Part shown: in pieces, positions 42,401-64,000 of the stretch
Layout: every line of letters starts with the position of its first letter
Position numbering within the stretch: position 1 is the first letter of the stretch
Assembly: GCA_053919585.1 (NCBI GenBank)
Contig: CM132793.1
Direction: 5' to 3' (one strand)
From: Euprymna scolopes
Taxonomy: Eukaryota
Length of the DNA stretch: 64,000 nucleotides
Position numbers and translations under genes: made by a program
Notes under the pieces: generated by a model
The model's input: the letters and a program-made list of their open reading frames with translations, nothing else
Databases searched by the model: none
Told to the model about the DNA's origin: nothing

Positions 42401-45400
42401 AAACAAATAATGGATATATTACCCTGTGTAAAGGGTCAACTGGCAGGTTTCCAATTTTTCTGTACATTTTAGTGCACAGGTTAACGTAATCAGATATAAA
42501 TTTGTGGCCCAGTGTGAGGGGGACAGTTTATAGTTGCAATTACATGCTGGAGGGATGAAAAGTAGTTTGATGAGCTGTTATCTACATCTATCTGAAATCT
42601 ATATAACAAGTTGTCATAATAAACAGATAAATATACTTAGCTTGCACACAAAACATTTACCGAAACCAATGCTACAATATTTTGGGCAAAACACACAATT
42701 TACATCAAACTGATTATGTGAACAGATTTGATCCTATTCAACTGAGATTCCAAAATGATTTATCACATAAAAAACTACATACAATAACTAAAATGGATAA
42801 ACAAGGTTTTTTCTTGTATACATTTTTTTTTTTAAGTTTTACAACAAACCATATATTTTCAATTCTACTCAATCTGTAATTGTTCACATCAAAGCTTATA
42901 AAGTGTTGAAGAACTTTAAAGGCTTCATGCTTGTTCCTGTTCCCAAAAATTGTAAATCATAATACACACAGCACACTTTTCAAACAAGGGCTGAAAAAGT
43001 GTCCATCAGAAAAGAATTGCAGACTATGATTTACATTTCAGCCACAAAGAAAATTAAATGTACTAATTGTCATTCTATTGCTGGGTCCACTTTATACCAC
43101 AAACTTATATTTAATGACTTGGATCTCTGAACGCAGAGGAATTGAAAATCTCAGCTGATGTTTACAGGTAAAAAAGTAAATAAAACAAAAAAAAAAGATG
43201 AAAAAAAAAGTTTAATAAAAAAAAATATTTAGAATCATAATAGTATATAAAAATATTGATTATGGTAGCAGTCATAATTATTTGTAGTAATAATAAATTA
43301 TGTTTATTTTTTCCTATATATTTATGAGAACAAAAAAAGAGAAGGGGTATATTACAAATGGACTTTATGTGCCAATTGAAGCACATCAGAGCCAGCTTGC
43401 TTTATATAGAAGAGTAGTCAACATACTGTACCACTCATATGCTGTATATGCATGATAAATGACCACTGGCTACCACAGTAGCCATAGTTAATTGCAGCTT
43501 TCATTATTAGTTTATATAGAGAGCCTGCAAATTCAAGGAAAACCATTTGAATAAAGCAGACCAGTAGTATAGAAATGGAAGCCGATCAAACAATTTTAAA
43601 GTATTAATGAGATCAAATCAGATACATTTTTTCTTATCTTTCTTAAAATGATAATGCAACATTGGTTTATAATTTCCTTTGATTTTATAGAAAAGCAAAT
43701 CTTCAAGACTATTTCCCTCTCTTCCACCCACCCCACGTAACATACAGCAATGATGCATATGCAATTATAACAGTTCCATATCAAATATAAATTGTCTTAA
43801 CACGATGAATATCAAGTTAAAACAGATTAGAAATAATGTATTAACAAGATTCTTTCTACATATTTTGTTCATATCTAATATTAAAAAGAAATGAATAGAG
43901 CTTGGAGATATTTAGATAGTTTTATGGAGGCACAAAATGATGGTTACTGTATATTATAATAAAAAAAGTTAGAAAAAGAAAAAGCAAGAAAAAAGTATGA
44001 TATTAACTAAATAATGTATAGGATTTTGGTAAGGATTGTATTATGGTTCTAGATGTTGATTCTATACTTAAAGGATATTTAAAATGTTGATTCTATACTT
44101 AAAGGATATTTAGCAAAGAAAGGAGAATAGCGATACGATTTCAGATATTTATAACTGCACACAGTTTTCATTTCAAAAGAAACTATGCATGCACAAATCA
44201 TTAGACAGTATTCGTAAATTAAGAAAAAAAAGGAAATGCATCATCACTTTTAGACTAAGTTAAATGCTCATTTTTACTCAATTATTAATTGTTTAAAACT
44301 AAAACTAAAACGAGAAAAATAAGCTTCTCTTCAAGTTGCACCAAGATATTCCAGCTTTCACGATATTTTCAAGGCAGTCATATTGAAGCAAGGGGTGTTT
44401 TGTGTTCATTTTGAAAATGGTTTTATTTTTTTATTATTTATTTTTAATATATAGGATTTACATATCATACACGCATACAAAAGAAGAGAGATAGAGAAAA
44501 GTTGTGTATGCACGAGACACACACACATTCTCATCTGCACGAGACACACACATACAGATATCCTCAGACACACAAAGAGATATATGGATAAACGCTAGCT
44601 AGCTCCTTCAACGGCCCCACATTGTCTTGGTCTCACAAAACGATCAGGGAAATTGAAATGGTGCCACATGATCCCATACTTAGCAGTGATCAGGAGTTGC
44701 CCACTAGTCTTGTTTATAAGATCAATATGATTTTAAATTGTGGATGGAAAAAAACTTGAGGCTGGGAGAAAAGATGTGGGAGTAGGCATTGACCGGGGTA
44801 AATGACGTTTGGAGGCAGAAAGAAGGTGACTCGTGAGAGAAGGTAGGAGACGGATAAGCTGTCTTCTAAGATATAGAAACAAGAATCCAAGTATAAGGCT
44901 ACCATTTCCTCACAGCCATGCGTTTGTGAGACAGAGACAAAAGTGAGACAGAGGCCAAGCAGCTCAAAAAGGCCTAAGGTCAGGGTTGCTGCCAGTTAGG
45001 TATGGGACCTCTAGAGTTAAGTTTTCAAACAGATATATGATTCAGCGGAAGGAACAGAAAATAGAAAAAATCAGTTAATTTATTTATAGAGTCTGTGATT
45101 TTAATTCTAATTCAACTTTATGAACCCTTACACTATTTTTTTAGATTATATATTTAAAATTCTTTTTAAAAATATGCTTTCTTTTGTTTTTTTACATAAA
45201 AATTTAAAATTGATTTAAAAAGAAAAATATACACAACGAAATTTTTTTTAGTAAAGTCTCCTTTTTTTCAGTTATGATTTAAGAAATAATAAAAGTGAAA
45301 TTTGTTTAAGATGAGAACAACATGTGCAGAGGCACCTAGAGCCTTGCCGAGTGGTCGCACACACAGGGACGATCAGGTAAGTTGTTTACTATTGAACCAA

Positions 45401-46080
45401 TAGACACAGCTCTATTTGTGCACAATAGAAGATCTAACATGGATTCAGGATTTCTATTTGACATAAGATGTCAGGAAATTTAGACTAAAGAATTTAAATG
45501 ATTTCCTGCCAGAGAGTTCTTCTTTGGAATCTAATTTGCTTTGTTTAGCAATGTTGCTCCCATATCAAGCCTTCATTTCACATTAAAGAGAAGTGAAAAA
45601 AAAATCATCAACTGAAATGAATGATGGTAAAATAATGAGAAAAAGAAAAATGAATTAGGGTGGAGGGCCATATATAACCAAAAAGCCATTGGAAGTATAA
45701 AATAATATTGAAAATAATTTTTTAAAATAAATTAAAAAAATAATAAAATAAAAACAATAACTGGTACCATCAAAGGTAGTTTTTTAAAATGTTTTTGTTG
45801 TTTTTTTCTTTTCGTTTTTTGTTTTTTAAAGAGAAGGTAGGGTCTAGGTCCATGGTGGTTGGCCGGATGAGAAGTTGTCCTGTCAGTATTGGCACTACCA
45901 ATGGTTGAATGACAATGTAGCAGAGTCCAACATGCCAAAATCTGACAATGGCGATTGTAGTGCTGCTGATGTCAATGAGAACAACACTGTCCATTGAAGA
46001 AATAGTAGTAGTAGTAGTAGTAGGAGTGAAGTGTAGTTATGGTAGTTACAGTAGTAATAGTCGGCTGCTGCTGATGCCAC

Positions 46081-46217
46081 TCAACTGCCCAAAGCTGGAG
46101 CAGCAGGGACAGGCAGTATGACAGGGATGTGATAGTACTTGCACAGTTGACGGCGGCATTTTCCTTTGACTGAATCACGGCACACAGTCACCTTGCCATC
46201 CGTCACTTCAACATACT
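46081..46217 (-). CDS. mbl: Muscleblind last coding exon, CCCH zinc finger (E)YVEVTDGKVTVCRDSVKGKCRRQLCKYYHIPVILPVPAAPALGS*
   Basis: Acceptor TTATTTTTTTCAG, phase 1, matching the upstream exon. C-x7-C-x4-C-x3-H with the muscleblind VTVCRD leader. TGA at 46081-46083. Confidence 0.92.
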
Positions 46218-46747
46218 CTGAAAAAAATAAATAAATCATAGAAATTTAAAGCAAAAAACAAGATAATTCGCCCTAATTTATTTCTATTTGTATCAAAGGT
46301 TAAAAACTCAAAACAAGAGTAAATAAAAAAAAATGCTAATGTTTTTAGGATCTTTTGACAAGAGTCGGATCATTTAACGTTGCACAGAAATCAAAATTAT
46401 CTCACAAACACTTCAAGTATGTAATTTGCCGAGTTAATCAATTAAAATTATGAGAACTTCATGCATAATTCTTGTGTCCCTATTTACTTAGCTGCTTACA
46501 AGGACAGAGTTAGATATATGATCAGTTTATAAGGTGGGGAAAATCCATCTCGCCAAAAAGTGAACTCTGGATTATGACAAAAATAAAAATTGTTTTAGTT
46601 TGGAAAGATTTCTCCTTCACTGATCAATGGCAAAAAAGATGAAGTATCGAATCAAAAGCTCCTGAAAAAATGTCCAAGGAAGAGCCATGTGTACTTCTTG
46701 TATAAACATAAAATTGATAATCAAATATTTATTGAAAAAAAAATGTA

Positions 46748-47917: not shown

Positions 47918-48002
47918 CCTCCAACAAATGCACAAACTTGCATTGTGGCCTGTTACATTGGCTAGACTTAAAATCGCGGCACACTCGGAGGGTGTCCAGC
48001 AA
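47918..48002 (-). CDS. mbl: Muscleblind exon, CCCH zinc finger LLDTLRVCRDFKSSQCNRPQCKFVHLLE
   Basis: 85 nt. Polypyrimidine tract plus AAG acceptor, GTAAGT donor, phase 0 to 1. Joins 46217 in frame to form a tandem CCCH pair like the second pair of protostome Mbl. Confidence 0.92.
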
Positions 48003-49652: not shown

Positions 49653-49792
49653 CTGGTTGTTCTCATCAGAGTAATTAACACTAGCAGCATTAGTGGAAAG
49701 CGAGGAGGTGGTGGTGCTGGCAGTGGTGATGGTGGTGTTGTTGTTGGCATTGGCCATCAATGTAGGTTGGTTGGGATTGACGATCATCGGCA
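49653..49792 (-). CDS. mbl: Muscleblind linker exon xPMIVNPNQPTLMANANNNTTITTASTTTSSLSTNAASVNYSDENNQ (alternative internal acceptor at 49680)
   Basis: Acceptor CAACAG is the first AG after a 223-nt AG-free zone. Donor CAG|GTAGTA is phase 0 and joins LLDTL in frame. The acceptor choice is inferred. Confidence 0.7.
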
Positions 49793-54125: not shown

Positions 54126-55596
54126 ATTTGTAGATAAACCTTGTTGCAATTGCAAACTGCTAACTGATTTCATTTGAAAATCACCTTCAGCAGTCATTAG
54201 CATTAGTGAAACTGATTGCTCAATATTAATATTGGATTCAGAAATCAAATAGAAAAATGATATTAAAGAATTAAATGGAAAGACTATCTTGTTAAAAGGA
54301 CAGGTTTCAGATGTAACAGGTAGTTCTTGCCAAGAAAACTAGAGGTCACACAATTCAACAAAGCTACAGCTTTCCATATTTAACCTCAAATAACAAAAAA
54401 GATTTAGAAAAAAATCATGCTTATAAACTATAAAGTTAAAACAAAAATAATAATTAAAAGAAGTTTAGTAATTTGCAAAAGATTTCTACAAATATCAAAT
54501 ATGAACCTCAAAAACTCAGTTTGAAATATATCAAATGTCCAATTTTATGATATAAAAAAGAAATTAAGAGTAGACATGATTTCATGCTGTGATTAGCAAC
54601 TTTGCGTGGAATTTATTTATAAAATTTTTGCTTTTAAATTAAATATTGTCATAAATACAAATATTTATGAACAGATGATGAAATCAATTACACTAAAATA
54701 AATTAAAATGGAAAAGATAAATATACAAATTATTTTGAAAAAAAGAATTAATATTAACAATATGATCTGACTCTATAAAATAGAAAATTAATTTTAAATA
54801 TTAGGATCCTTGGATGCTTTGTTTTTTGATTAACACATTTTTAAAATGCACTAAACAATAGTAATAATACTAGTAGCAGTTAAAGATTCTAACCAGTCCA
54901 TTAAGAAATTCTGAACACTCAAAGCAAATTGAAAAATGGTAGGATAACCAGGCTACACTGCATGTTAGGCAACAGACAACACAAGCAGTTGAGATCAGGT
55001 TTTTTTTTTTGTGTGTGTGTGTTTTTTTTTTGGGGGGGGGGGTCTTTTTTTAATTGCAAAAAAAAAAAATCAAGTTGTTTTTTGATTTTTTTTTGTTTAT
55101 TAAAACTTTGTTAATATTGATTTTGGTTATTTTAATAAAAAAAAATAATTTTTGAAGCAGTGGCAGGTGTGAATCTGCTTGGATGGAGGTCAAGGTAAAT
55201 AAAAAGTTAAAAATATAAAAGAAAATATCTAACGATCAAAATTATTTTATTATCATAAAGTAAGGAAATAGGAGAAATTAGGAATAGGAGGAAAGCTGTA
55301 GCAATGCAGAAAAATACTGAGAGCATTGTGTGAGCCGAAGCTGGGTAGTAGGCGGGGACAAACAAGTTTCACCTGCCACGACCACCAAGACGACCAACAA
55401 CAACAGCAGCAAGGGCAGCCTCCACCACCAGCAGCAGCAGCACCATTGCCCCCCTCAAACATCAGGGAGGCACTGTGTTTGTGCATGTGTTTTTATGGTG
55501 GGTGCCACCCATCGCCACTGCCGCCTGCTGCCAACTGCCATCGTCGCTGCCACCGCCGCCGCCATGGCCGATATGCCTGCCTCACTGTCTGCTCAC

Positions 55597-55714
55597 GACT
55601 GGGAGTTATGCTGAAGACTGTCCGATTGGAGGACTAGCCAACTTGGCAGATGTGATGGAGGTAATGGAGTCAGATGAGGAGGCCCTGCACCATATTCCAG
55701 GCTGTTAGATATAC
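55597..55714 (-). CDS. mbl: Candidate 118-nt muscleblind exon (C)ISNSLEYGAGPPHLTPLPPSHLPSWLVLQSDSLQHNSQ(S)
   Basis: Strong acceptor TTTTCCTCATCCTCTTCACTGCAG and GTGAGC donor. Open in phase 1. If the donor is skipped, it ends immediately in TGA (55593-55595). Confidence 0.6.
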
Positions 55715-58700
55715 CTGCAGTGAAGAGGATGAGGAAAACATAATGATGACGACGACAACCACCATCACATGACATTTTCAAGAGAGGCTTTCTTTCGCAG
55801 ATTCCAAAATGCCGTTGTCATAATTTTTTTTAAATTTAAAAAAAAAAAAAACAATAACTACAAGTGGACACTTCATATTTCAAAGACACTTAGGAGCACC
55901 AAGAAGAAATGAGTTAAGAGTTTAGATATTTTATAAAAATTATCTAAAAGAAATATGAAAACCTAATCTACATTTATGCAATGAAATCTAAAATAAGATT
56001 ATTCCACAAGTTTTTAAACAGCAGTAAAGAATATTTTTGCTATGATATCAAAACAGCAGCAGCTAAGAATCCATTTAAAACTGTTCAGAAAGAGAAAATA
56101 AATCTTGGATAAAAATGATCTTTTTTATGGTTTATTTTCCAAAATTTAGAAACAACAAGTGAATCCTATTAAAATTGTGCAAATCAAAACAGGATTCATC
56201 TTTCTATAATTCCAGCAACTACCTCGTAATGGATAAGTGCTGAATATTAAAAAAAAAAAACTACATACACTCTTTAGGTACCTGAGAAGTGCTGCATAAT
56301 CTCTGGAGTTGTTTTTAGTTTTAAAATTGAATTTTTAAAACAGCCTATTATATATGGCTATAATCTTGAAAATACTAGAGATTTCAACATGGTAGATTTA
56401 ATATATTTTTGTAATAGTGTATACTAAATTTGTATTCTTTAGTCATTTATCAAAAGCAAAATAATATTTTGAAGACATTCTTGATAATATTTTTGATAGT
56501 AGTTTTAAAAAATTTGTTATAATTTTGGTATTTTGGTATTTTGTTTATTTCCGTTTTTGATAGTTTATAAGTAACAGCTGGTTAACATCTGGTCAAGTGA
56601 AGTTTAAAGATATCTTTTGAGATGCAAAAATAAATCAAGCAAATGTTTTATTTTTCTGATTTCATTTCATAAATGATTATCTTTTATTCAACAGTTAAGC
56701 TATTTTACAAAAATTGCTTTCAGTTTTGTTAAATTTATATTGTATACTTTGATATATTTCTGCAATCTTACTAAAACTTATTCTTAGTTTATTAAAGCTA
56801 TAAGTTAATCAATGTAATCTTTGTATTTTTACAATAGTACAATGTTATAGAAAATGTTCTTTCAAAGATTAAATTTTCAGTTTTTTATTGTATAAAATAT
56901 GACTTGAACAATTATTAAAAACAATCTAAAATGTTAAACATTGCATTTGTGAAATTATAAAGAAATTTTTTCATGTAATCTTACTAGTATTTATACATGC
57001 ACAATGCATATCTTTAAAACACCCAAAAACACAAACTACAAGAATCTTTTTTATTGAAGGGAATTTAAAAAAAGAGAACAGAACTGATCACCAAATTAAA
57101 AATGTCAATTTTGCAATTGTACATCTTTCTAAAAGCTCAATTTTTCAAAATAAAAAAAAGAAAACTGATGGAGTGGGGATATAAAACAAAGATACTCTGG
57201 AAGAAAATTCAAATATTTAAATCCAACCATTTTTTTCCTCTCTATATACTTAATAGAATTTCAGAAAATACAGGAAAATAGTAATATACAATAAAATCTT
57301 ATAGAAATTAGCCTAAATTCAAGGAAATCATTTTTTGTTTTAAAATACATAGACTGATGTGAAATAGAATTGGCACACTTTAGTCAAGATGAAATGTACA
57401 GTTGTGTAATGCAGTTACAGATGCTCATTCCATATACTGACCAATATATGCAAAGTTATTAAAATAAGAGCTGAACAGCTAAATAGAAAATAGTAAGGTC
57501 AACTTAGGATTGTAACATCGTAAGCCAAAGTAGTTGTGAAACACCTTTGCAAAGCTTGTTGACGAGCATAAGAGACAAGAAATTCTGCTAGAATGACAAA
57601 CTATAGTTGCATACTATTCGAGACTAAGAAAATGGGTGGGATGTAAGAATACTCCCAAGAGATACTTTTTACTAGATCTACATCTTTTGCTCTCATCTAG
57701 AGATAACAATCATTTGCATAAAGGAAATATTAACCAATCACTGAATAGCATCATTCTGAATGCACTAAGTGACCTTATATTTATACCAGTAGAGACATGC
57801 ATGATACTGTATCAAAATGCACATATGGCCATAGCCAATGTGTAAATTGACAATTCAAGAAAATCTACATTGGCACTTATGAAGGTCTAATTTGCACTTT
57901 TACTTTTTTCATGCTACAGTTGCACTTAGAATGCACCAATCTTGGTTCAATAAAATTTTGTCAATGATCATAGAAATTTTCATTTAATGAATATTGGCAG
58001 CAACAATGTCTCAAGCATGTTATCTGCAACAATTCTATATAGAAAATCATGAAAACTGAATAAAAGGTTAAAAGTGACAACAGCTATATGGTGGACACAT
58101 TTTATTATGCCAAACCATAGTGTAGCTATTCTGTAAAAGTGGACAACTATGAATGTCTATTAAATGCCATCAAAGTTAACAAAATATTGTCAGTCTTATA
58201 GTCCTATCTGCTCTAATGAAAAAGTCCTTTCAGTGTGATGTAATCATATTCTTAATCAGTGTATTAGTAAACTGTTGATGTTAAAAAGATTAATACGAAT
58301 AAAGCAAAAATAAACAAAACAAAAAAAATATTGTCTTTGCCTGAATGTTGTTAACAAAAGAATCTTACATGAAAACTATTGAATCAGTTTGAAAAAAAAA
58401 TTGTTATACAAAAACAAAAAAAATCAATATTACAAATAAAACATCTTTCAAATTCTTTGGATTAGAATTCAAAATTGGGCAAATAAGTAATCCAACAAGA
58501 AAATGTTTTAGAAAACAAACTGATAGAATAACGGGTTAAAGTGACAGACAATTTAAAATTGGCAAAAAGATTATGAAACCAATAAAGTGCTGCCACCTTG
58601 AATTTGAAACAATAAATATCAAAGATTCTTTGGTTATGGAAGCAACAGTGTAGAGGAGTTAAAATATGCAGAAAATACAAACTTTGCAGTAGTTTCACAA

Positions 58701-58751
58701 AAGTGCAAACATGAACATTTAATAAAAAGATTTGAATGTAGTAGTACTCAC

Positions 58752-58793
58752 AAGTAAAATAAGGTTGAATTTCATTTAATTTTGTTGAAGAAT
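58752..58793 (-). CDS. mbl: 42-nt microexon copy B, xSSTKLNEIQPYFT
   Basis: CTTTCCAG acceptor, GTGAGT donor, phase 1-1. Paralog of 63055-63096. Assignment to mbl rests on strand, position and phase. Confidence 0.75.
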
Positions 58794-59059
58794 CTGGAAA
58801 GTAGAATAGAAAATGTGATCAATATAGTTAAATTGTTAAAAACATTTTTAACAACATTGAAATAACTATTGTAACTTTTGAAATAAATATAAATAACTGA
58901 AAGTAACTTGTTTATACATAGTTCCTCATATAATATGCACATATACTATTATTATTATTATTATTATATAAAGAACTATTAATAAAATTTTTATGCTAAT
59001 AATTATGAAAAAATCTATTCATAAAAATAATTCAAAATTCACAAAAACAGTTGTGAAAA

Positions 59060-62000
59060 CCATCCATTGTATGGCTATCCATTCAGGAAACTATCTATTG
59101 GATAGCCGTCGACTTGCAAAAGCCATCCATTATATGGCCATCTATTCTCAAAAGCCATCCATTGTACAGCAATCTATAACAACACACCACTGTATGGTCA
59201 TCTATTCATGACAAACATCCATTGTATGGACATCTATTCTCCAAAGTCATCTATTGTATGGATGTCTAATCTACAAAGCCATTCTTTGTATGGTCATCTA
59301 TTTGTGAAAACCATTCATTGTATAACCATCTATTCACTATAAACATCGATTATATGGCTGTCTTATCGAAAGCCATCCATTGTATGGTCGTATATTGTCC
59401 AATGTCATCCATTATATGGGTATATATTTGCAATAACCATCCATTGTATGGCCATTAATTTGCTATGACCATCCATCGTATGACCGTCTATTCATGATAA
59501 CCATCCATTGTATAACTATCTCTTTGTGGTAACCATCCATTTTATGACCGTCTCTTTGTGGTAACCATCTATTATATGACCGTCTCTTTGTGGTAACCAT
59601 CCATTATATGACCGTCTCTTTGTGGTAACCATCCATTATATGACCGTCTCTTTGTGGTAACCATCCATTATATGACCGTCTCTTTGTGGTAACAATCCAT
59701 TATATGACCGTCTCTTTGTGGTAACCATCCATTATATGACCGTCTCTTTGTGGTAACCATCCATTATATGACCGTCTCTTTGTGGTAACCATCCATTATA
59801 TGACCGTCTCTTTGTGGTAACCATCCATTATATGACCGTCTCTTTGTGGTAACCATCCATTATATGACCGTCTCTTTGTGGTAACCATCCATTATATGAC
59901 CGTCTCTTTGTGGTAACCATCCATTATATGACCGTCTCTTTGTGGTAACCATCCATTATATGACCGTCTCTTTGTGGTAACCATCCATTATATGACCGTC
60001 TCTTTGTGGTAACCATCCATTATATGACCGTCTCTTTGTGGTAACCATCCATTATATGACCGTCTCTATGTGGTAACCATCCATTATATGGCCGTCTCTT
60101 TGTGGTAATCATCCATTATATGACCGTCTCTTTGTGGTAACCATCCATTATATGACCGTCTCTTTGTGGTAACCATCCATTATATGACCGTCTCTTTGTG
60201 GTAACCATCCATTATATGACCGTCTCTTTGTGGTAACCATCCATTATATGACCGTCTCTTTGTGGTAACCATCCATTATATGACCGTCTCTTTGTGGTAA
60301 CCATCCATTATATGACCGTCTCTTTGTGGTAACCATCCATTATATGACCGTCTCTTTGTGGTAACCATCCATTATATGACCGTCTCTTTGTGGTAACCAT
60401 CCATTATATGACCGTCTCTTTGTGGTAACCATCCATTATATGACCGTCTCTATGTGGTAACCATCCATTATATGGCCGTCTCTTTGTGGTAACCATCCAT
60501 TATATGACGTCTCTTTGTGGTAACCATCCATTATATGACCGTCTCTTTGTGGTAACCATCCATTATATGACCGTCTCTTTGTGGTAACCATCCATTATAT
60601 GACCGTCTCTTTGTGGTAACCATCCATTATATGACCGTCTCTTTGTGGTAACCATCCATTATATGACCGTCTCTTTGTGGTAACCCATCCATTATATGAC
60701 GTCTCTTTGTGGTAACCATCTATTATATGACCGTCTCTTTGTGGTAACCATCCATTATATGACCGTCTCTTTGTGGTAACCATCCATTATATGACCGTCT
60801 CTTTGTGGTAACCATCCATTATATGACCGTCTCTTTGTGGTAACCATCCATTATATGGCCGTCTCTTTGTGGTAATCATCCATTATATGGCCGTCTCTTT
60901 GTGGTAACCATCCATTATATGACCGTCTCTTTGTGGTAACCATCCATTATATGACCGTCTCTTTGGGATAACCGTCCATTGTATGACCGTCTCTTTGGGA
61001 TAACCATCCATTGTATGACTGTCTCTTTGTGGTAACCATCCATGGTATAACCGTCTCTTTGTGGTAACCATCCATTATATGACCGTCTCTTTGTGGTAAC
61101 CATTCATTATATGACCGTCTCTTTGTGGTAACCATCCATTATATGACCGTCTCTTTGTGGTAACCATCCATTATATGACCGTCTCTTTGTGATAACAATC
61201 CATTGTATAACTGTCTCTTTGTGGTAACCATCCATTGTATGATTGTCTATTCATGTTAACCATTCATTGTATGACCGTCTCTTCATGGTAACCATCCATT
61301 GTATGACCGTCTACTCATGATAACCATCCATTGTATAACTATCTCTTTGTGGTAACCATCTATTATATGACCATCTCTTTGTCGTAACCATCCATTGTAT
61401 GACCATCTATTTGTGATAACCATTCATTGTATAACTGTCTCTTTGTGGTAACCATCCATTATATGACCATCTCTTTGCGGTAACCATCCATTGTATGACC
61501 GTCTATTCATGATAACCATCCATTGTATAACTGTCTCTTTGTGGTAACCATCCATTATATGACCATCTCTTTGTGGTAACCATCCATTGTATGATTGTCT
61601 ATTCATGATAACCATCCAAGGTATGACCGTCACTTCATGGTAACCATTCATTGTATGCCTATTTTTGATAACCATCCATTGTATGACCGTCTATTCATGA
61701 TAACCACCCATTGTATGACCATCTCTTTGTGGTAACGATCCATTGTATGACCGTCTCTTCATGGTAACCATCTATTATATGACCAACTCTTCAGTGGTAA
61801 CCATTCATTATATGACCATCTCTTTGAGGTAACCATCCATTATATAACTGTCTAATTGTGATAACCATCCATTGTATGGCTGTCTATTCTCCTAAGCCAT
61901 CCATTCTCTATGGCTGTTTATCTGCAACAATGATTGGTTGTATGGCTGTCTATTTGTAACACCCATCCATTGTATGATCATCTATTCTTGAAGCCATCTA

Positions 62001-62420
62001 TTGTATGGCGATTGATACACTATAACCATCCAATGTATGACTGTCTATTTGTGATAACTGTCCATTGTATGATTGTCTATTGCTGATAGTCATCCATTTT
62101 ATGGCAATCTATATACAACAATCATCCATTCTATGGCCATCTATTCACGACAACCATCTACTGTATGACTCTTCGCTATAACTATCCATTGTGGGACTGT
62201 CTATCCTTGAAAGCCATCCATTTTATGGTCATCTATTCATCAACACTCTTCTATTTTATGACTATGTACTCGCGCTAACCATACATTTTATGTTAGCCTA
62301 TTCACAACCATCCATAATATAGTCATCTGTTCACAACAACCATCCATTGTATCATGATCTATTCGTGATAACCATTCATTATATGATTATCTATTAGCGA
62401 TAATCATCCACTATATTGAG
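59060..62420. repeat. 32-bp minisatellite CCATCCATTATATGACCGTCTCTTTGTGGTAA, about 100 copies
   Basis: Near-identical core at about 59530-61180 with progressively diverged units on both flanks. Confidence 0.98.
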
Positions 62421-63054
62421 ACGTATTCAAGAAAATATCAAAATATCATTGTCATAGTGATATTTATTATTAAAAACGTCTAAAACGTTTTGTAGCCTAT
62501 TCAGAAAAATCATTACAATGAAATATATCTTTATTAATGATTTTAAGTTTGCATAAACACTTGTTTATAAAAATATAGGGTTATATGAACAGTTATTGAA
62601 AAGGCAAGAAATTTATATTTTTTGTAGGCAATTTTCTAATAATGTTTAAGCAAAATAGAAAGTGAAATAGCAGCTTCAATAAAAGCTGGAAAAGTTTTCA
62701 AACTTTAAATGAAAATATGAAAATATCTTTTAAATTATGGCTAATTGCAATTTTACAATCAAACCAACAATCTATTTCCAGGTTATAAAAGAAAATTTAA
62801 CAACTAATGCAGTACATAAATATAAGTATGAGTTCTCTTTAGATTTTAAATAACTTTAATGCAAATAATATAAACACAACTCAATAGAAGAAAAACAAAT
62901 GGAATATGTAAATTAATAATAAAGAATTTATAACTAAAATAACTTCATAAGAATATTATAAAATACAATTTCTTTTAATTCAGAAGTAAATTTTTTATTG
63001 GAAAATGTTTTAATGCTAAAATTAATGAAGATAAGTAAATAAGAAAATACTTAC

Positions 63055-63096
63055 AAGTAAAATAGGGTTGAATTTCATTCAATTTCGTGGATGAAT
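63055..63096 (-). CDS. mbl: 42-nt microexon copy A, xSSTKLNEIQPYFT
   Basis: TGCATTTACAG acceptor, GTAAGT donor, phase 1-1. Five differences from copy B, all synonymous. Confidence 0.75.
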
Positions 63097-63823: not shown

Positions 63824-64000
63824 CTGAACATGATCAGAATATGAATGACATCAGTAATCTGAACAAGATCAGAATATGAATGTCATCAGTAATCTGAACA
63901 AGATCAGAATATGAATGTCATCAGTAATCTGAACAAGATCAGAATATGAATGCCATTAGTAATCTGAACAAGATCAGAATATGAATGCCATCAGTAATCT
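63824..64000. repeat. 35-bp tandem repeat CTGAACAAGATCAGAATATGAATGYCATCAGTAAT, running off the window end
   Basis: Period 35 (63824, 63859, 63894...). Confidence 0.95.

What the first reader, a model, noticed from the sequence alone, without database searches (positions are those of the whole stretch)
58752..63096. Duplicated 42-nt microexons in muscleblind encoding an identical peptide, with synonymous-only divergence
Seen: two 42-nt minus-strand segments (63096-63055 and 58793-58752), about 4.3 kb apart, each with canonical AG and GTRAGT sites. In phase 1 both read xSSTKLNEIQPYFT. All 5 differences are silent third positions (TCA/TCT, TCC/TCA, ACG/ACA, TTG/TTA, CCC/CCT). The other two frames contain stops, and similarity ends at the splice sites. 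Inference: this is an old exon duplication with both copies under purifying selection; if about a quarter of random changes are silent, 5 of 5 has a chance of roughly 1 in 1000. Keeping two exons for one peptide suggests either 0/1/2-copy linker dosage or the same motif placed under two independent splicing controls. I do not know of this in any described mbl/MBNL gene.
Basis: partly seen in the sequence, partly recalled or inferred. Interest (0 to 1): 0.88.

Follow-up and report, generated by a model that had tools for sequence, protein, structure and literature searches.

The report
Twin 42-nt exons in cephalopod muscleblind
Two old copies of a 42-base exon in a cephalopod muscleblind gene are both real and are spliced in together, adding a doubled 14-residue peptide to the protein's floppy tail; this is an ordinary exon duplication, kept unusually strictly, and no evidence for a copy-number switch was found.

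Summary
Exons A (63096-63055) and B (58793-58752), minus strand, are 42 nt each, have AG/GT sites and encode SSTKLNEIQPYFT. They differ at 5 silent sites, with no intron similarity.

The window is a cephalopod (decapodiform) muscleblind gene, not an insect one. Ten RNA contigs from ten datasets and three species all read upstream exon -> A -> B -> downstream. All 26 cephalopod Mbl proteins found carry both copies, including Octopus sinensis X1-X12, O. vulgaris, O. bimaculoides and Argonauta.

The duplication therefore predates the squid/cuttlefish-octopus split. Paralog-specific silent marks are shared across species, and at least 9 inferred changes are all silent. That indicates protein-level purifying selection, not gene conversion.

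The exons are not in a zinc-finger linker. They sit in the disordered C-terminal tail, between the conserved ...QQQPYIPVT and the MblC-type end FAGHPPSVPRF*, which are contiguous in 33 non-cephalopod proteins.

No 0-copy or 1-copy isoform was seen, so the "dosage / independent control" idea is unsupported, though rare skipping is not excluded. The pair is already in public Octopus protein models, but I found no paper on it.

Verdict: new member of a known kind (tandem exon duplication giving an internal repeat). Interest is modest. This scan's note s1-295713 covers the same stretch.

The parts
63055..63096 (-). Exon A, 42 nt, phase 1-1. With the last T of the upstream exon it encodes Y-SSTKLNEIQPYFT.
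   Evidence: sequence, AG/GTAAGT. L001 843-884 matches 100%; it is unit 1 in all 10 RNA contigs.
58752..58793 (-). Exon B, 42 nt, phase 1-1. It encodes the same 14 residues, the Y coming from A's last T plus AT.
   Evidence: L001 885-926 matches 100%; it is unit 2 in all 10 contigs; joint 58752->55714 and a loose end running into the 48002 exon.
58794..63054 (-). Intron between A and B (4261 nt). It holds a 32-nt tandem array at 59056-61885 (about 76 copies), with relics to 62416. No homology to the other flanks of A or B.
55356..55714 (-). Alternative downstream exon. Joined to B it reads CISNSLEYGAGPPHL...NSQS with a stop at 55595-55593. A possible 118-nt donor lies at 55597.
   Evidence: X23 record 19: joint 58752->55714, contig runs to 55356, depth 4.5. 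(L002 of Sepia pharaonis type). (O. sinensis isoforms end ...YFTCVTSNLEY...STQS)..
49653..49792 (-). Predicted 140-nt exon. T + exon reads LPMIVNPNQ...VNYSDENNQ. It would put the next exon into its zinc-finger frame. It is homologous to the bivalve '...LPMVVAPE...VNYFDDNKQ' exon. No transcript support was found here.
47918..48002 (-). Exon read in two frames. After B it reads (F)AGHPPSVPRF*, the conserved MblC-type C-terminus. In frame 0 it reads LLDTLRVCRDFKSSQCNRPQCKFVHLLE, a CCCH finger.
   Evidence: transcripts use the +1 frame. (tail conserved across phyla). (frame-0 finger conserved in other phyla).
46003..46217 (-). Last exon seen in the transcripts. It holds the second extra CCCH finger in frame 0 (stop at 46083-46081) and otherwise serves as 3' UTR. 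By homology with L002 it continues to about 44302.
   Evidence: RNA runs of the same organism hold 0.95-1.00 of the words of 45000-46218

Best explanation
A and B are two internal coding exons of a cephalopod muscleblind (mbl) gene. They arose by one ancient tandem exon duplication and are spliced in together in every transcript and protein seen here.

SHOWN:
- Transcripts run ...QQQPYIPVT | Y-SSTKLNEIQPYFT (A) | Y-SSTKLNEIQPYFT (B), then one of two tails.
- The first tail is FAGHPPSVPRF*, by direct splicing to exon 48002-47918. This is the major branch in one run.
- The second tail is CISNSLEY...*, from the exon starting at 55714.
- Each exon is 42 nt (a multiple of 3) with the same phase at both ends. 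The pair therefore inserts 28 residues without disturbing the frame choice made further downstream.
- The pair is present in decapodiforms (the window species, Sepia pharaonis and a third species) and in octopods (three Octopus species and Argonauta).
- The pair is absent from gastropod, bivalve, nemertean and arthropod proteins, where ...PV(T/S) and FAGHPP are contiguous.
- All nucleotide changes seen, between the copies and between species, are silent. The copies keep their own silent marks across species.

INFERRED:
- A new exon arose in this intron and was duplicated before the coleoid radiation. Each copy has since been held by selection on the peptide.
- The peptide lies in a predicted disordered tail. 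It most likely acts as a short linear motif whose double dose matters. Together with the ancestral QPYIPVT it makes three QPY-containing motifs spaced 14 residues apart.
- The binding partner and the effect are unknown. Localisation or self-association are the natural guesses, because that is what the small C-terminal exons of vertebrate MBNL1 control.
For: - Structure of the exons.
- Transcripts: one search found Logan RNA contig L001 (SRR27666063).
- 10 contigs from 10 datasets (4 identical to the window, 5 of Sepia pharaonis type, 1 from a JGI metatranscriptome) all have unit 1 = A-type and unit 2 = B-type.
- A and B share no 30-mer, so a k=31 assembly cannot have chimerised them.
- (run X23): spliced joint 58752->55714 with GT..AG ends, a loose end from B into the 48002 exon (depth 62.1), and an upstream contig ending in two 42-nt units (depth 70.7, roughly 62.1 + 4.5).
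- Proteins: searches give 26 cephalopod proteins, all with 2 copies, and 33 non-cephalopod proteins with an uninterrupted ...PV(T/S)|xAGHP junction.
- Age: one search shows the silent marks TCA-TCC..TTG/CTG (A) versus TCT-TCA..TTA (B) fixed in 3 species. One search identifies SRR3011300 (L006) as Sepia pharaonis (PMC5541922). Octopus and Argonauta carry the pair.
- Selection: one search gives dN 0 and dS about 1.2. By hand count, at least 9 changes on the six-sequence tree are all silent. Silent divergence between orthologs (3 of 8.3 sites) is not lower than 3'UTR divergence, so the constraint is on the peptide.
- Disorder: one search gives pLDDT 31-38 for residues 249-298.
Against: - All RNA evidence comes from assembled contigs, which drop rare variants, so low-level or tissue-specific skipping of A or B cannot be excluded.
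- No nucleotide sequence of the Octopus exons could be fetched because the gene ranges exceed 100 kb. For octopods, orthology of copy 1 with A and copy 2 with B rests on order and peptide only.
- In Octopus copy 2 lacks IQ (YSSTKLNEPYFT), so the two copies are not equally constrained everywhere.
- The read-laying table placed both 42-nt units of X23 record 21 on exon B with 0 mismatches. I cannot reconcile this with the A-then-B contigs except as a tool quirk.
- The function (linear motif, valency) is pure inference, and no partner or assay supports it.
- No Nautilus or vampire squid data were available, so the origin is not dated more finely than 'before the decapodiform-octopod split'.
Confidence: 0.8

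Rival explanations
1. One reading: the two copies are independently regulated cassette exons, giving 0, 1 or 2 copies of the peptide in different tissues or stages.
For: - Both exons are multiples of 3 and phase-symmetric, so any combination stays in frame.
- The neighbouring part of the gene is heavily alternatively spliced: three possible downstream partners, and an upstream 72-nt cassette present or absent among P0152/P0154.
- Contigs cannot show rare forms (notes).
Against: - None of 10 RNA contigs from 10 datasets, and none of 26 cephalopod proteins (including all 12 Gnomon isoforms of O. sinensis), lacks either copy.
- Depth in X23 balances without a bypass.
- There are no YGCY clusters near either exon that would suggest Mbl autoregulation.
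Confidence: 0.12
2. The identical peptides are kept alike by gene conversion between the copies (concerted evolution), not by selection on each copy.
For: Silent position 29 (CAA/CAG) has the same state in A and B within each of two species. The 3' 25 nt of A and B are identical or nearly so within species.
Against: - Three silent differences in the 5' half are fixed between A and B and shared by all three species. Conversion would erase them.
- The Octopus copy 2 lost IQ while copy 1 kept it.
- The homologous tract is only 42 nt in 4.3 kb of unrelated intron.
Confidence: 0.04
3. The constraint is on the RNA (splicing enhancers needed by very short exons) rather than on the peptide.
For: Microexons generally need strong exonic and intronic signals. 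A 14-nt block (AATGAAATTCAACC) is identical in A and B.
Against: - Every one of at least 9 changes falls on a silent codon position in one frame. An RNA-level constraint does not predict this.
- Silent sites diverge about as fast as the 3'UTR.
- The peptide of copy 1 is 100% identical from cuttlefish to Octopus.
Confidence: 0.03
4. The exons are mutually exclusive, or one copy is an unused pseudo-exon or an assembly artefact.
For: Tandemly duplicated exons are classically mutually exclusive (PMC9013439 abstract).
Against: Both copies, told apart by their 5 silent differences, lie side by side in the same RNA contigs. This holds in three species.
Confidence: 0.01

Closest known systems
Tandem exon duplication (the general mechanism; reviewed in PMC9013439)
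   Same: Two adjacent exons of the same gene and strand, with the same length and phase and clear sequence similarity confined to the exon.
   Different: The classical outcome is mutually exclusive choice between diverged copies. Here both copies are included together and encode the same peptide, so the result is an internal tandem repeat, not an isoform switch.
MblC-type muscleblind isoform (C-terminus ...YQQALAMQLQQPFVPV(T/S) FAGHPPGVPRF*; 'most ancient isoform' in PMC2238819)
   Same: The window's major transcript has the same N-terminal CCCH pair, the same KSGVPVYQP...AYQQALAMQLQQ block and the same FAGHPPSVPRF* end.
   Different: Cephalopods carry 26-28 extra residues (two copies of the microexon peptide) between ...PVT and FAGHPP. 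These two parts are contiguous in 33 non-cephalopod proteins examined.
[quoted passage not shown]
   Same: Short exons in the disordered C-terminal part of an MBNL protein. In vertebrates they tune nuclear localisation (exon 5) and dimerisation (exon 7).
   Different: - The vertebrate exons are alternative, single-copy and unrelated in sequence.
- Exon 7 acts through a cysteine, and the cephalopod peptide has none.
- The cephalopod exons show no skipping in the data at hand.
- That exon 7 sits at the equivalent junction is my recollection and was not tested.
Other lineage-specific inserts at the same ...PVT|FAGHPP junction (seen here)
   Same: Patella (32 aa), Gigantopelta (14 aa), scallops (35-37 aa, resembling a copy of the preceding KSG...VPVT exon), P0162 (19 aa) and P0163 (13 aa) all have in-frame inserts at exactly this junction.
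   Different: The sequences are unrelated to SSTKLNEIQPYFT. Only cephalopods have a duplicated microexon.

Membership tests
muscleblind / MBNL gene | N-terminal tandem CCCH zinc fingers of the MBNL type on the same transcript | tested here: met
   The L001 ORF (298 aa) hits Pfam zf-CCCH_10 at 95.5 bits against a cutoff of 27. The nearest named proteins are Octopus muscleblind isoforms.
muscleblind / MBNL gene | Conserved C-terminal block ...KSG.P.YQP..AYQQAL.MQLQQ...PV(T/S) + FAGHPP.VPRF* | tested here: met
   (invariant columns).
Tandemly duplicated exons | Adjacent exons in one gene and strand, with equal length and phase, and similarity beyond chance that is confined to the exon | tested here: met
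   (0.00 matches expected by chance).
Mutually exclusive exons | One and only one copy in each mature transcript | tested here: not met
   Both copies are present in all 10 RNA contigs and 26 proteins.
Alternative cassette microexon | Transcripts both with and without the exon | tested here: inconclusive
   No skipped form appears in contigs, database proteins or the 12 O. sinensis isoforms. Only assembled contigs were available, not raw reads.
PY-type nuclear localisation signal (lead from memory: [R/K/H]-X2-5-P-Y in a disordered, basic region) | C-terminal [R/K/H]-X2-5-PY element | tested here: met
   K-LNEIQ-PY (X5) occurs in both copies, and K-LNE-PY (X3) in Octopus copy 2. A match this short is weak evidence.
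PY-type nuclear localisation signal | Structural disorder | tested here: met
   pLDDT 31-38 and no secondary structure for residues 249-298.
PY-type nuclear localisation signal | Overall basic character and an upstream basic or hydrophobic epitope | tested here: not met
   The peptide has one K and one E (net charge 0), and the flanking residues are Q/P/Y/T-rich.
PY-type nuclear localisation signal | Binding to transportin / import dependence | not testable with these tools
   Needs a binding or localisation assay.

The most novel reading that the evidence does not exclude
The doubled peptide is a cephalopod-specific, dose-dependent short linear motif. One possibility is a K-X3-5-PY import-type or self-association motif reiterating the ancestral QPY(I/L)PVT. 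It would retune where or how the MblC-type isoform acts, and one copy may be skipped in particular tissues. That would make this an evolved valency dial on a master splicing regulator, in a lineage known for unusual RNA processing.
Probability: 0.12. Interest if true: 0.55.

Novelty: new member of a known kind. Interest (0 to 1): 0.3.

Why it matters
The find shows a clean, datable case of exon gain plus duplication in the tail of a deeply conserved splicing regulator. Both copies have been held to the same 14 residues since before squids and octopuses diverged.

That degree of constraint on a disordered peptide argues for a real binding function. It gives a simple handle for studying what the MblC-type C-terminus does, using constructs with 0, 1 or 2 copies.

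It also corrects the picture of the locus. The organism is a cephalopod, and the exons lie before the conserved C-terminal end rather than in a zinc-finger linker. The next exon is read in two frames. The mechanism itself (tandem exon duplication making an internal repeat) is textbook, and the peptide pair is already in public Octopus gene models.

Tried and rejected
- tblastn of 150 MBNL-like proteins against the window found only the two finger exons, so the short tail exons had to be found through transcripts.
- Origin of the microexon from the 3' end of the upstream exon (LQQQPYIPVT versus LNEIQPYFT): nucleotide local alignment is no better than shuffles, and the protein match is only QPY, reached by 235 of 2000 shuffles. 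Not supported.
- A protein tree to place the window species was unresolved because of isoform gaps and low divergence. Placement rests instead on SRR3011300 = Sepia pharaonis and on shared indels. Octopus and Argonauta share NVAYQQ/QQPYLPVT, whereas the window species has NVAAYQQ/QQQPYIPVT like the outgroups.
- Fetching Octopus vulgaris and Argonauta genomic DNA failed because the gene ranges are 178 kb and 141 kb.
- I did not lay reads across both exons at once.
- A search for a cephalopod isoform using the 140-nt exon and the extra finger pair found none among 103 hits.
- YGCY counts within 200 nt of A and B were 0-2, against a background of about 1.6 per 200 nt, so no enrichment.
- The papers on Drosophila mbl (PMC3315501, PMC2238819) say nothing on such exons.
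Full report
**1. Observation**

On the minus strand, 63096-63055 (A) and 58793-58752 (B) are each 42 nt. A follows ACAG and is followed by GTAAGT. B follows CCAG and is followed by GTGAGT.

Read as 2 nt + 13 codons + 1 nt, both give SSTKLNEIQPYFT, and the other two frames each carry a stop. The five differences are all third-position and silent.

Of the 39 in-codon sites, 8.33 are synonymous. This gives pS 0.60, dS about 1.2 (near saturation) and dN 0. Simulated chances that 5 random changes are all silent are 2e-4 to 1.4e-3.

The intron flanks show no residual similarity (z 0.58 and -1.26 against shuffles). There is no third copy in the window.

**2. What gene, what organism**

CCCH motifs of the MBNL type lie downstream on the same strand, at 47981-47928 and 46182-46129. 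Searching the second finger exon against 1.84 billion proteins returned an 81-aa ORF (P0008) identical to the window.

Its source is a 1231-nt RNA contig of a public run, L001. L001 matches the window exactly in this order: 843-884 = A, 885-926 = B, 927-1011 = 48002-47918, 1011-1226 = 46218-46003. The first 842 nt come from exons beyond the window's end.

Its main ORF (298 aa) has the N-terminal muscleblind finger pair (Pfam zf-CCCH_10). It ends ...QQQPYIPVT-Y-SSTKLNEIQPYFT-Y-SSTKLNEIQPYFT-FAGHPPSVPRF*.

A search with that tail found Octopus vulgaris, O. bimaculoides, O. sinensis and Argonauta hians muscleblind proteins at 91-95% identity. The window is therefore from a cephalopod, not an insect.

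One of the related RNA contigs comes from SRR3011300, which PMC5541922 lists as Sepia pharaonis. The window's tail peptide is 100% identical to that species and 92% to Octopus. The window species is therefore a decapodiform. RNA runs of 'organism A' hold 95-100% of the words of the 3' exon.

**3. Are both exons used, and together?**

I fetched ten RNA contigs from ten datasets. Four are identical to the window, five are of S. pharaonis type, and one comes from a JGI metatranscriptome. All read upstream exon (...CCAGTAACAT) -> A-type unit -> B-type unit -> downstream exon. A and B share no 30-mer, so a k=31 assembler cannot have joined them by mistake.

All 26 cephalopod proteins retrieved carry two copies, and none has 0 or 1. 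They comprise 13 from RNA contigs, O. sinensis isoforms X1-X12 and the single models of the other three species.

Laying the contigs of four RNA runs on 54126-59050 gave three results in run X23:
- a spliced joint 58752->55714 with GT..AG ends (depth 4.5);
- a contig running from B into the 48002 exon (depth 62.1);
- an upstream contig of 218 nt plus two 42-nt units (depth 70.7).

The depths balance, which leaves no room for a large bypass.

One oddity remains. The tool laid both 42-nt units on exon B with no mismatch. A de Bruijn contig cannot contain the same 42-mer twice, and the same-species contigs have A then B. I treat this as a tool quirk and have recorded it as unexplained.

Only assembled contigs were available, so rare or tissue-restricted skipping is not excluded.

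**4. Where in the protein**

The exons are not in a linker between finger pairs. In 33 non-cephalopod proteins the block ...AYQQALAMQLQQPFVPV(T/S) runs straight into FAGHPP.VPRF*. These include Haliotis, Solemya, Mya, Lineus, a millipede, horseshoe crabs, spiders and a beetle. This is the MblC-type end.

Haliotis even has the same flanks as the window (QQPYIPVT|FAGHPPSVPRF). Cephalopods have 28 residues (26 in Octopus) inserted exactly at that junction.

Because each exon is 3n and phase-symmetric, the insert is compatible with all downstream choices:
- direct splicing to 48002-47918, read as FAGHPPSVPRF*;
- the 55714 exon, read as CISNSLEY...*;
- in principle, a 140-nt exon at 49792-49653 that would shift the 48002 exon into its finger frame. 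No cephalopod protein in the database uses the last route.

AlphaFold2 with a 12-sequence alignment gives pLDDT 31-38 and no secondary structure for residues 249-298. The peptide therefore sits in a disordered tail.

**5. Age and selection**

In the three decapodiform species the A copies share TCA-TCC...TTG/CTG and the B copies share TCT-TCA...TTA. The copies have evolved separately since before these species split, and they have not been homogenised.

Octopods have the pair too, so the duplication predates the decapodiform-octopod divergence. From general knowledge that is a few hundred million years; I did not date it.

By hand count on the six sequences, at least 9 substitutions are needed, and all are silent. 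At roughly 0.21-0.3 per change this is 1e-6 to 2e-5.

Silent sites differ between the window species and S. pharaonis at 3 of 8.3 sites in A. This is no slower than the 3'UTR (about 76% identity). The constraint is therefore on the peptide, not the RNA.

The only peptide change anywhere is the loss of IQ in copy 2 of the three Octopus species; Argonauta's model is truncated before that point. Silent position 29 co-varies between the copies within species, which could be a parallel change or a short conversion. The sample is too small to say.

**6. Mechanism**

Shown: two adjacent, phase-symmetric 42-nt exons with strong donors are co-spliced. They add two copies of YSSTKLNEIQPYFT between two ancient tail motifs.

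Inferred: a new exon arose in this intron and was duplicated in the cephalopod stem. The doubled peptide most likely acts as a short linear motif whose valency matters. Together with the ancestral QPYIPVT it makes three QPY motifs at 14-residue spacing.

A K-X3-5-PY pattern fits the core of PY-type import signals, but the region is not basic, so that remains a weak lead. [quoted passage not shown] That is the nearest functional analogy, not a homology.

**7. Comparison and novelty**

The mechanism is tandem exon duplication (PMC9013439). The outcome is an internal repeat rather than mutually exclusive choice.

The same junction has gained unrelated inserts in Patella, Gigantopelta, scallops and two unnamed taxa. 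It therefore tolerates in-frame exons.

The doubled peptide is already in public Octopus and Argonauta protein models. A full-text search for muscleblind plus cephalopod found no relevant paper.

I class it as a new member of a known kind. The strict two-copy conservation is a nice detail.

**8. Earlier notes of this scan**

- s1-295713 covers the same stretch as a seven-exon chain.
- s1-295745 covers the 55714 exon. I confirm its acceptor, but the X23 contig runs past the proposed 118-nt donor to at least 55356.
- s1-259177 independently calls this genome cephalopod.

Noticed in passing
window 47918-48002 (-) and 46003-46217 (-): One exon is read in two frames. Transcripts read it as (F)AGHPPSVPRF*, the conserved MblC-type end. 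Frame 0, together with the next exon, is an intact extra CCCH finger pair (LLDTLRVCRDF...CKYYHIPV). Bivalves, gastropods, arthropods and echinoderms annotate that pair in frame after a '...VNYFDxNxQ' exon. Both readings look conserved across phyla.
   Followed up: partly
window 49653-49792 (-): A predicted 140-nt exon (LPMIVNPNQ...VNYSDENNQ) is homologous to the bivalve exon that switches the next exon into the finger frame. No cephalopod protein in the database uses it.
   Followed up: partly
window 59056-61885 (relics to 62416): A 32-nt tandem array of about 76 copies at 91-99% identity fills most of the intron between the two microexons. A separate 35-nt tandem repeat lies at 63824-64000.
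   Followed up: no
proteins P0065, P0297, P0263/P0267, P0162, P0163: The ...PVT|FAGHPP junction has gained unrelated in-frame inserts in Patella (32 aa), Gigantopelta (14 aa), scallops (35-37 aa) and two unnamed taxa. The scallop insert looks like a copy of the preceding KSG...VPVT exon. This intron is a recurrent site of exon gain.
   Followed up: partly
L001-L010, position 29 of each 42-nt unit: The silent CAA/CAG site has the same state in A and B within a species: A/A in the window species, G/G in the L003 species, and G with A|G in Sepia pharaonis. This is either a parallel change or a short gene conversion.
   Followed up: no
window 58752-58793, read-laying run X23 record 21: The tool laid two consecutive 42-nt units of one contig on exon B, both with 0 mismatches ('goes back 42'). 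The first unit should be exon A, which has 5 differences. Unresolved; probably an artefact of laying a piece whose home lies outside the stretch.
   Followed up: partly
window 55356-55714 (-): In run X23 the exon starting at 55714 continues unspliced past the 118-nt donor proposed in note s1-295745, to at least 55356. In that form the reading frame from B stops at 55595-55593. The branch from B to this exon has depth 4.5, against 62.1 for B to the 48002 exon.
   Followed up: partly
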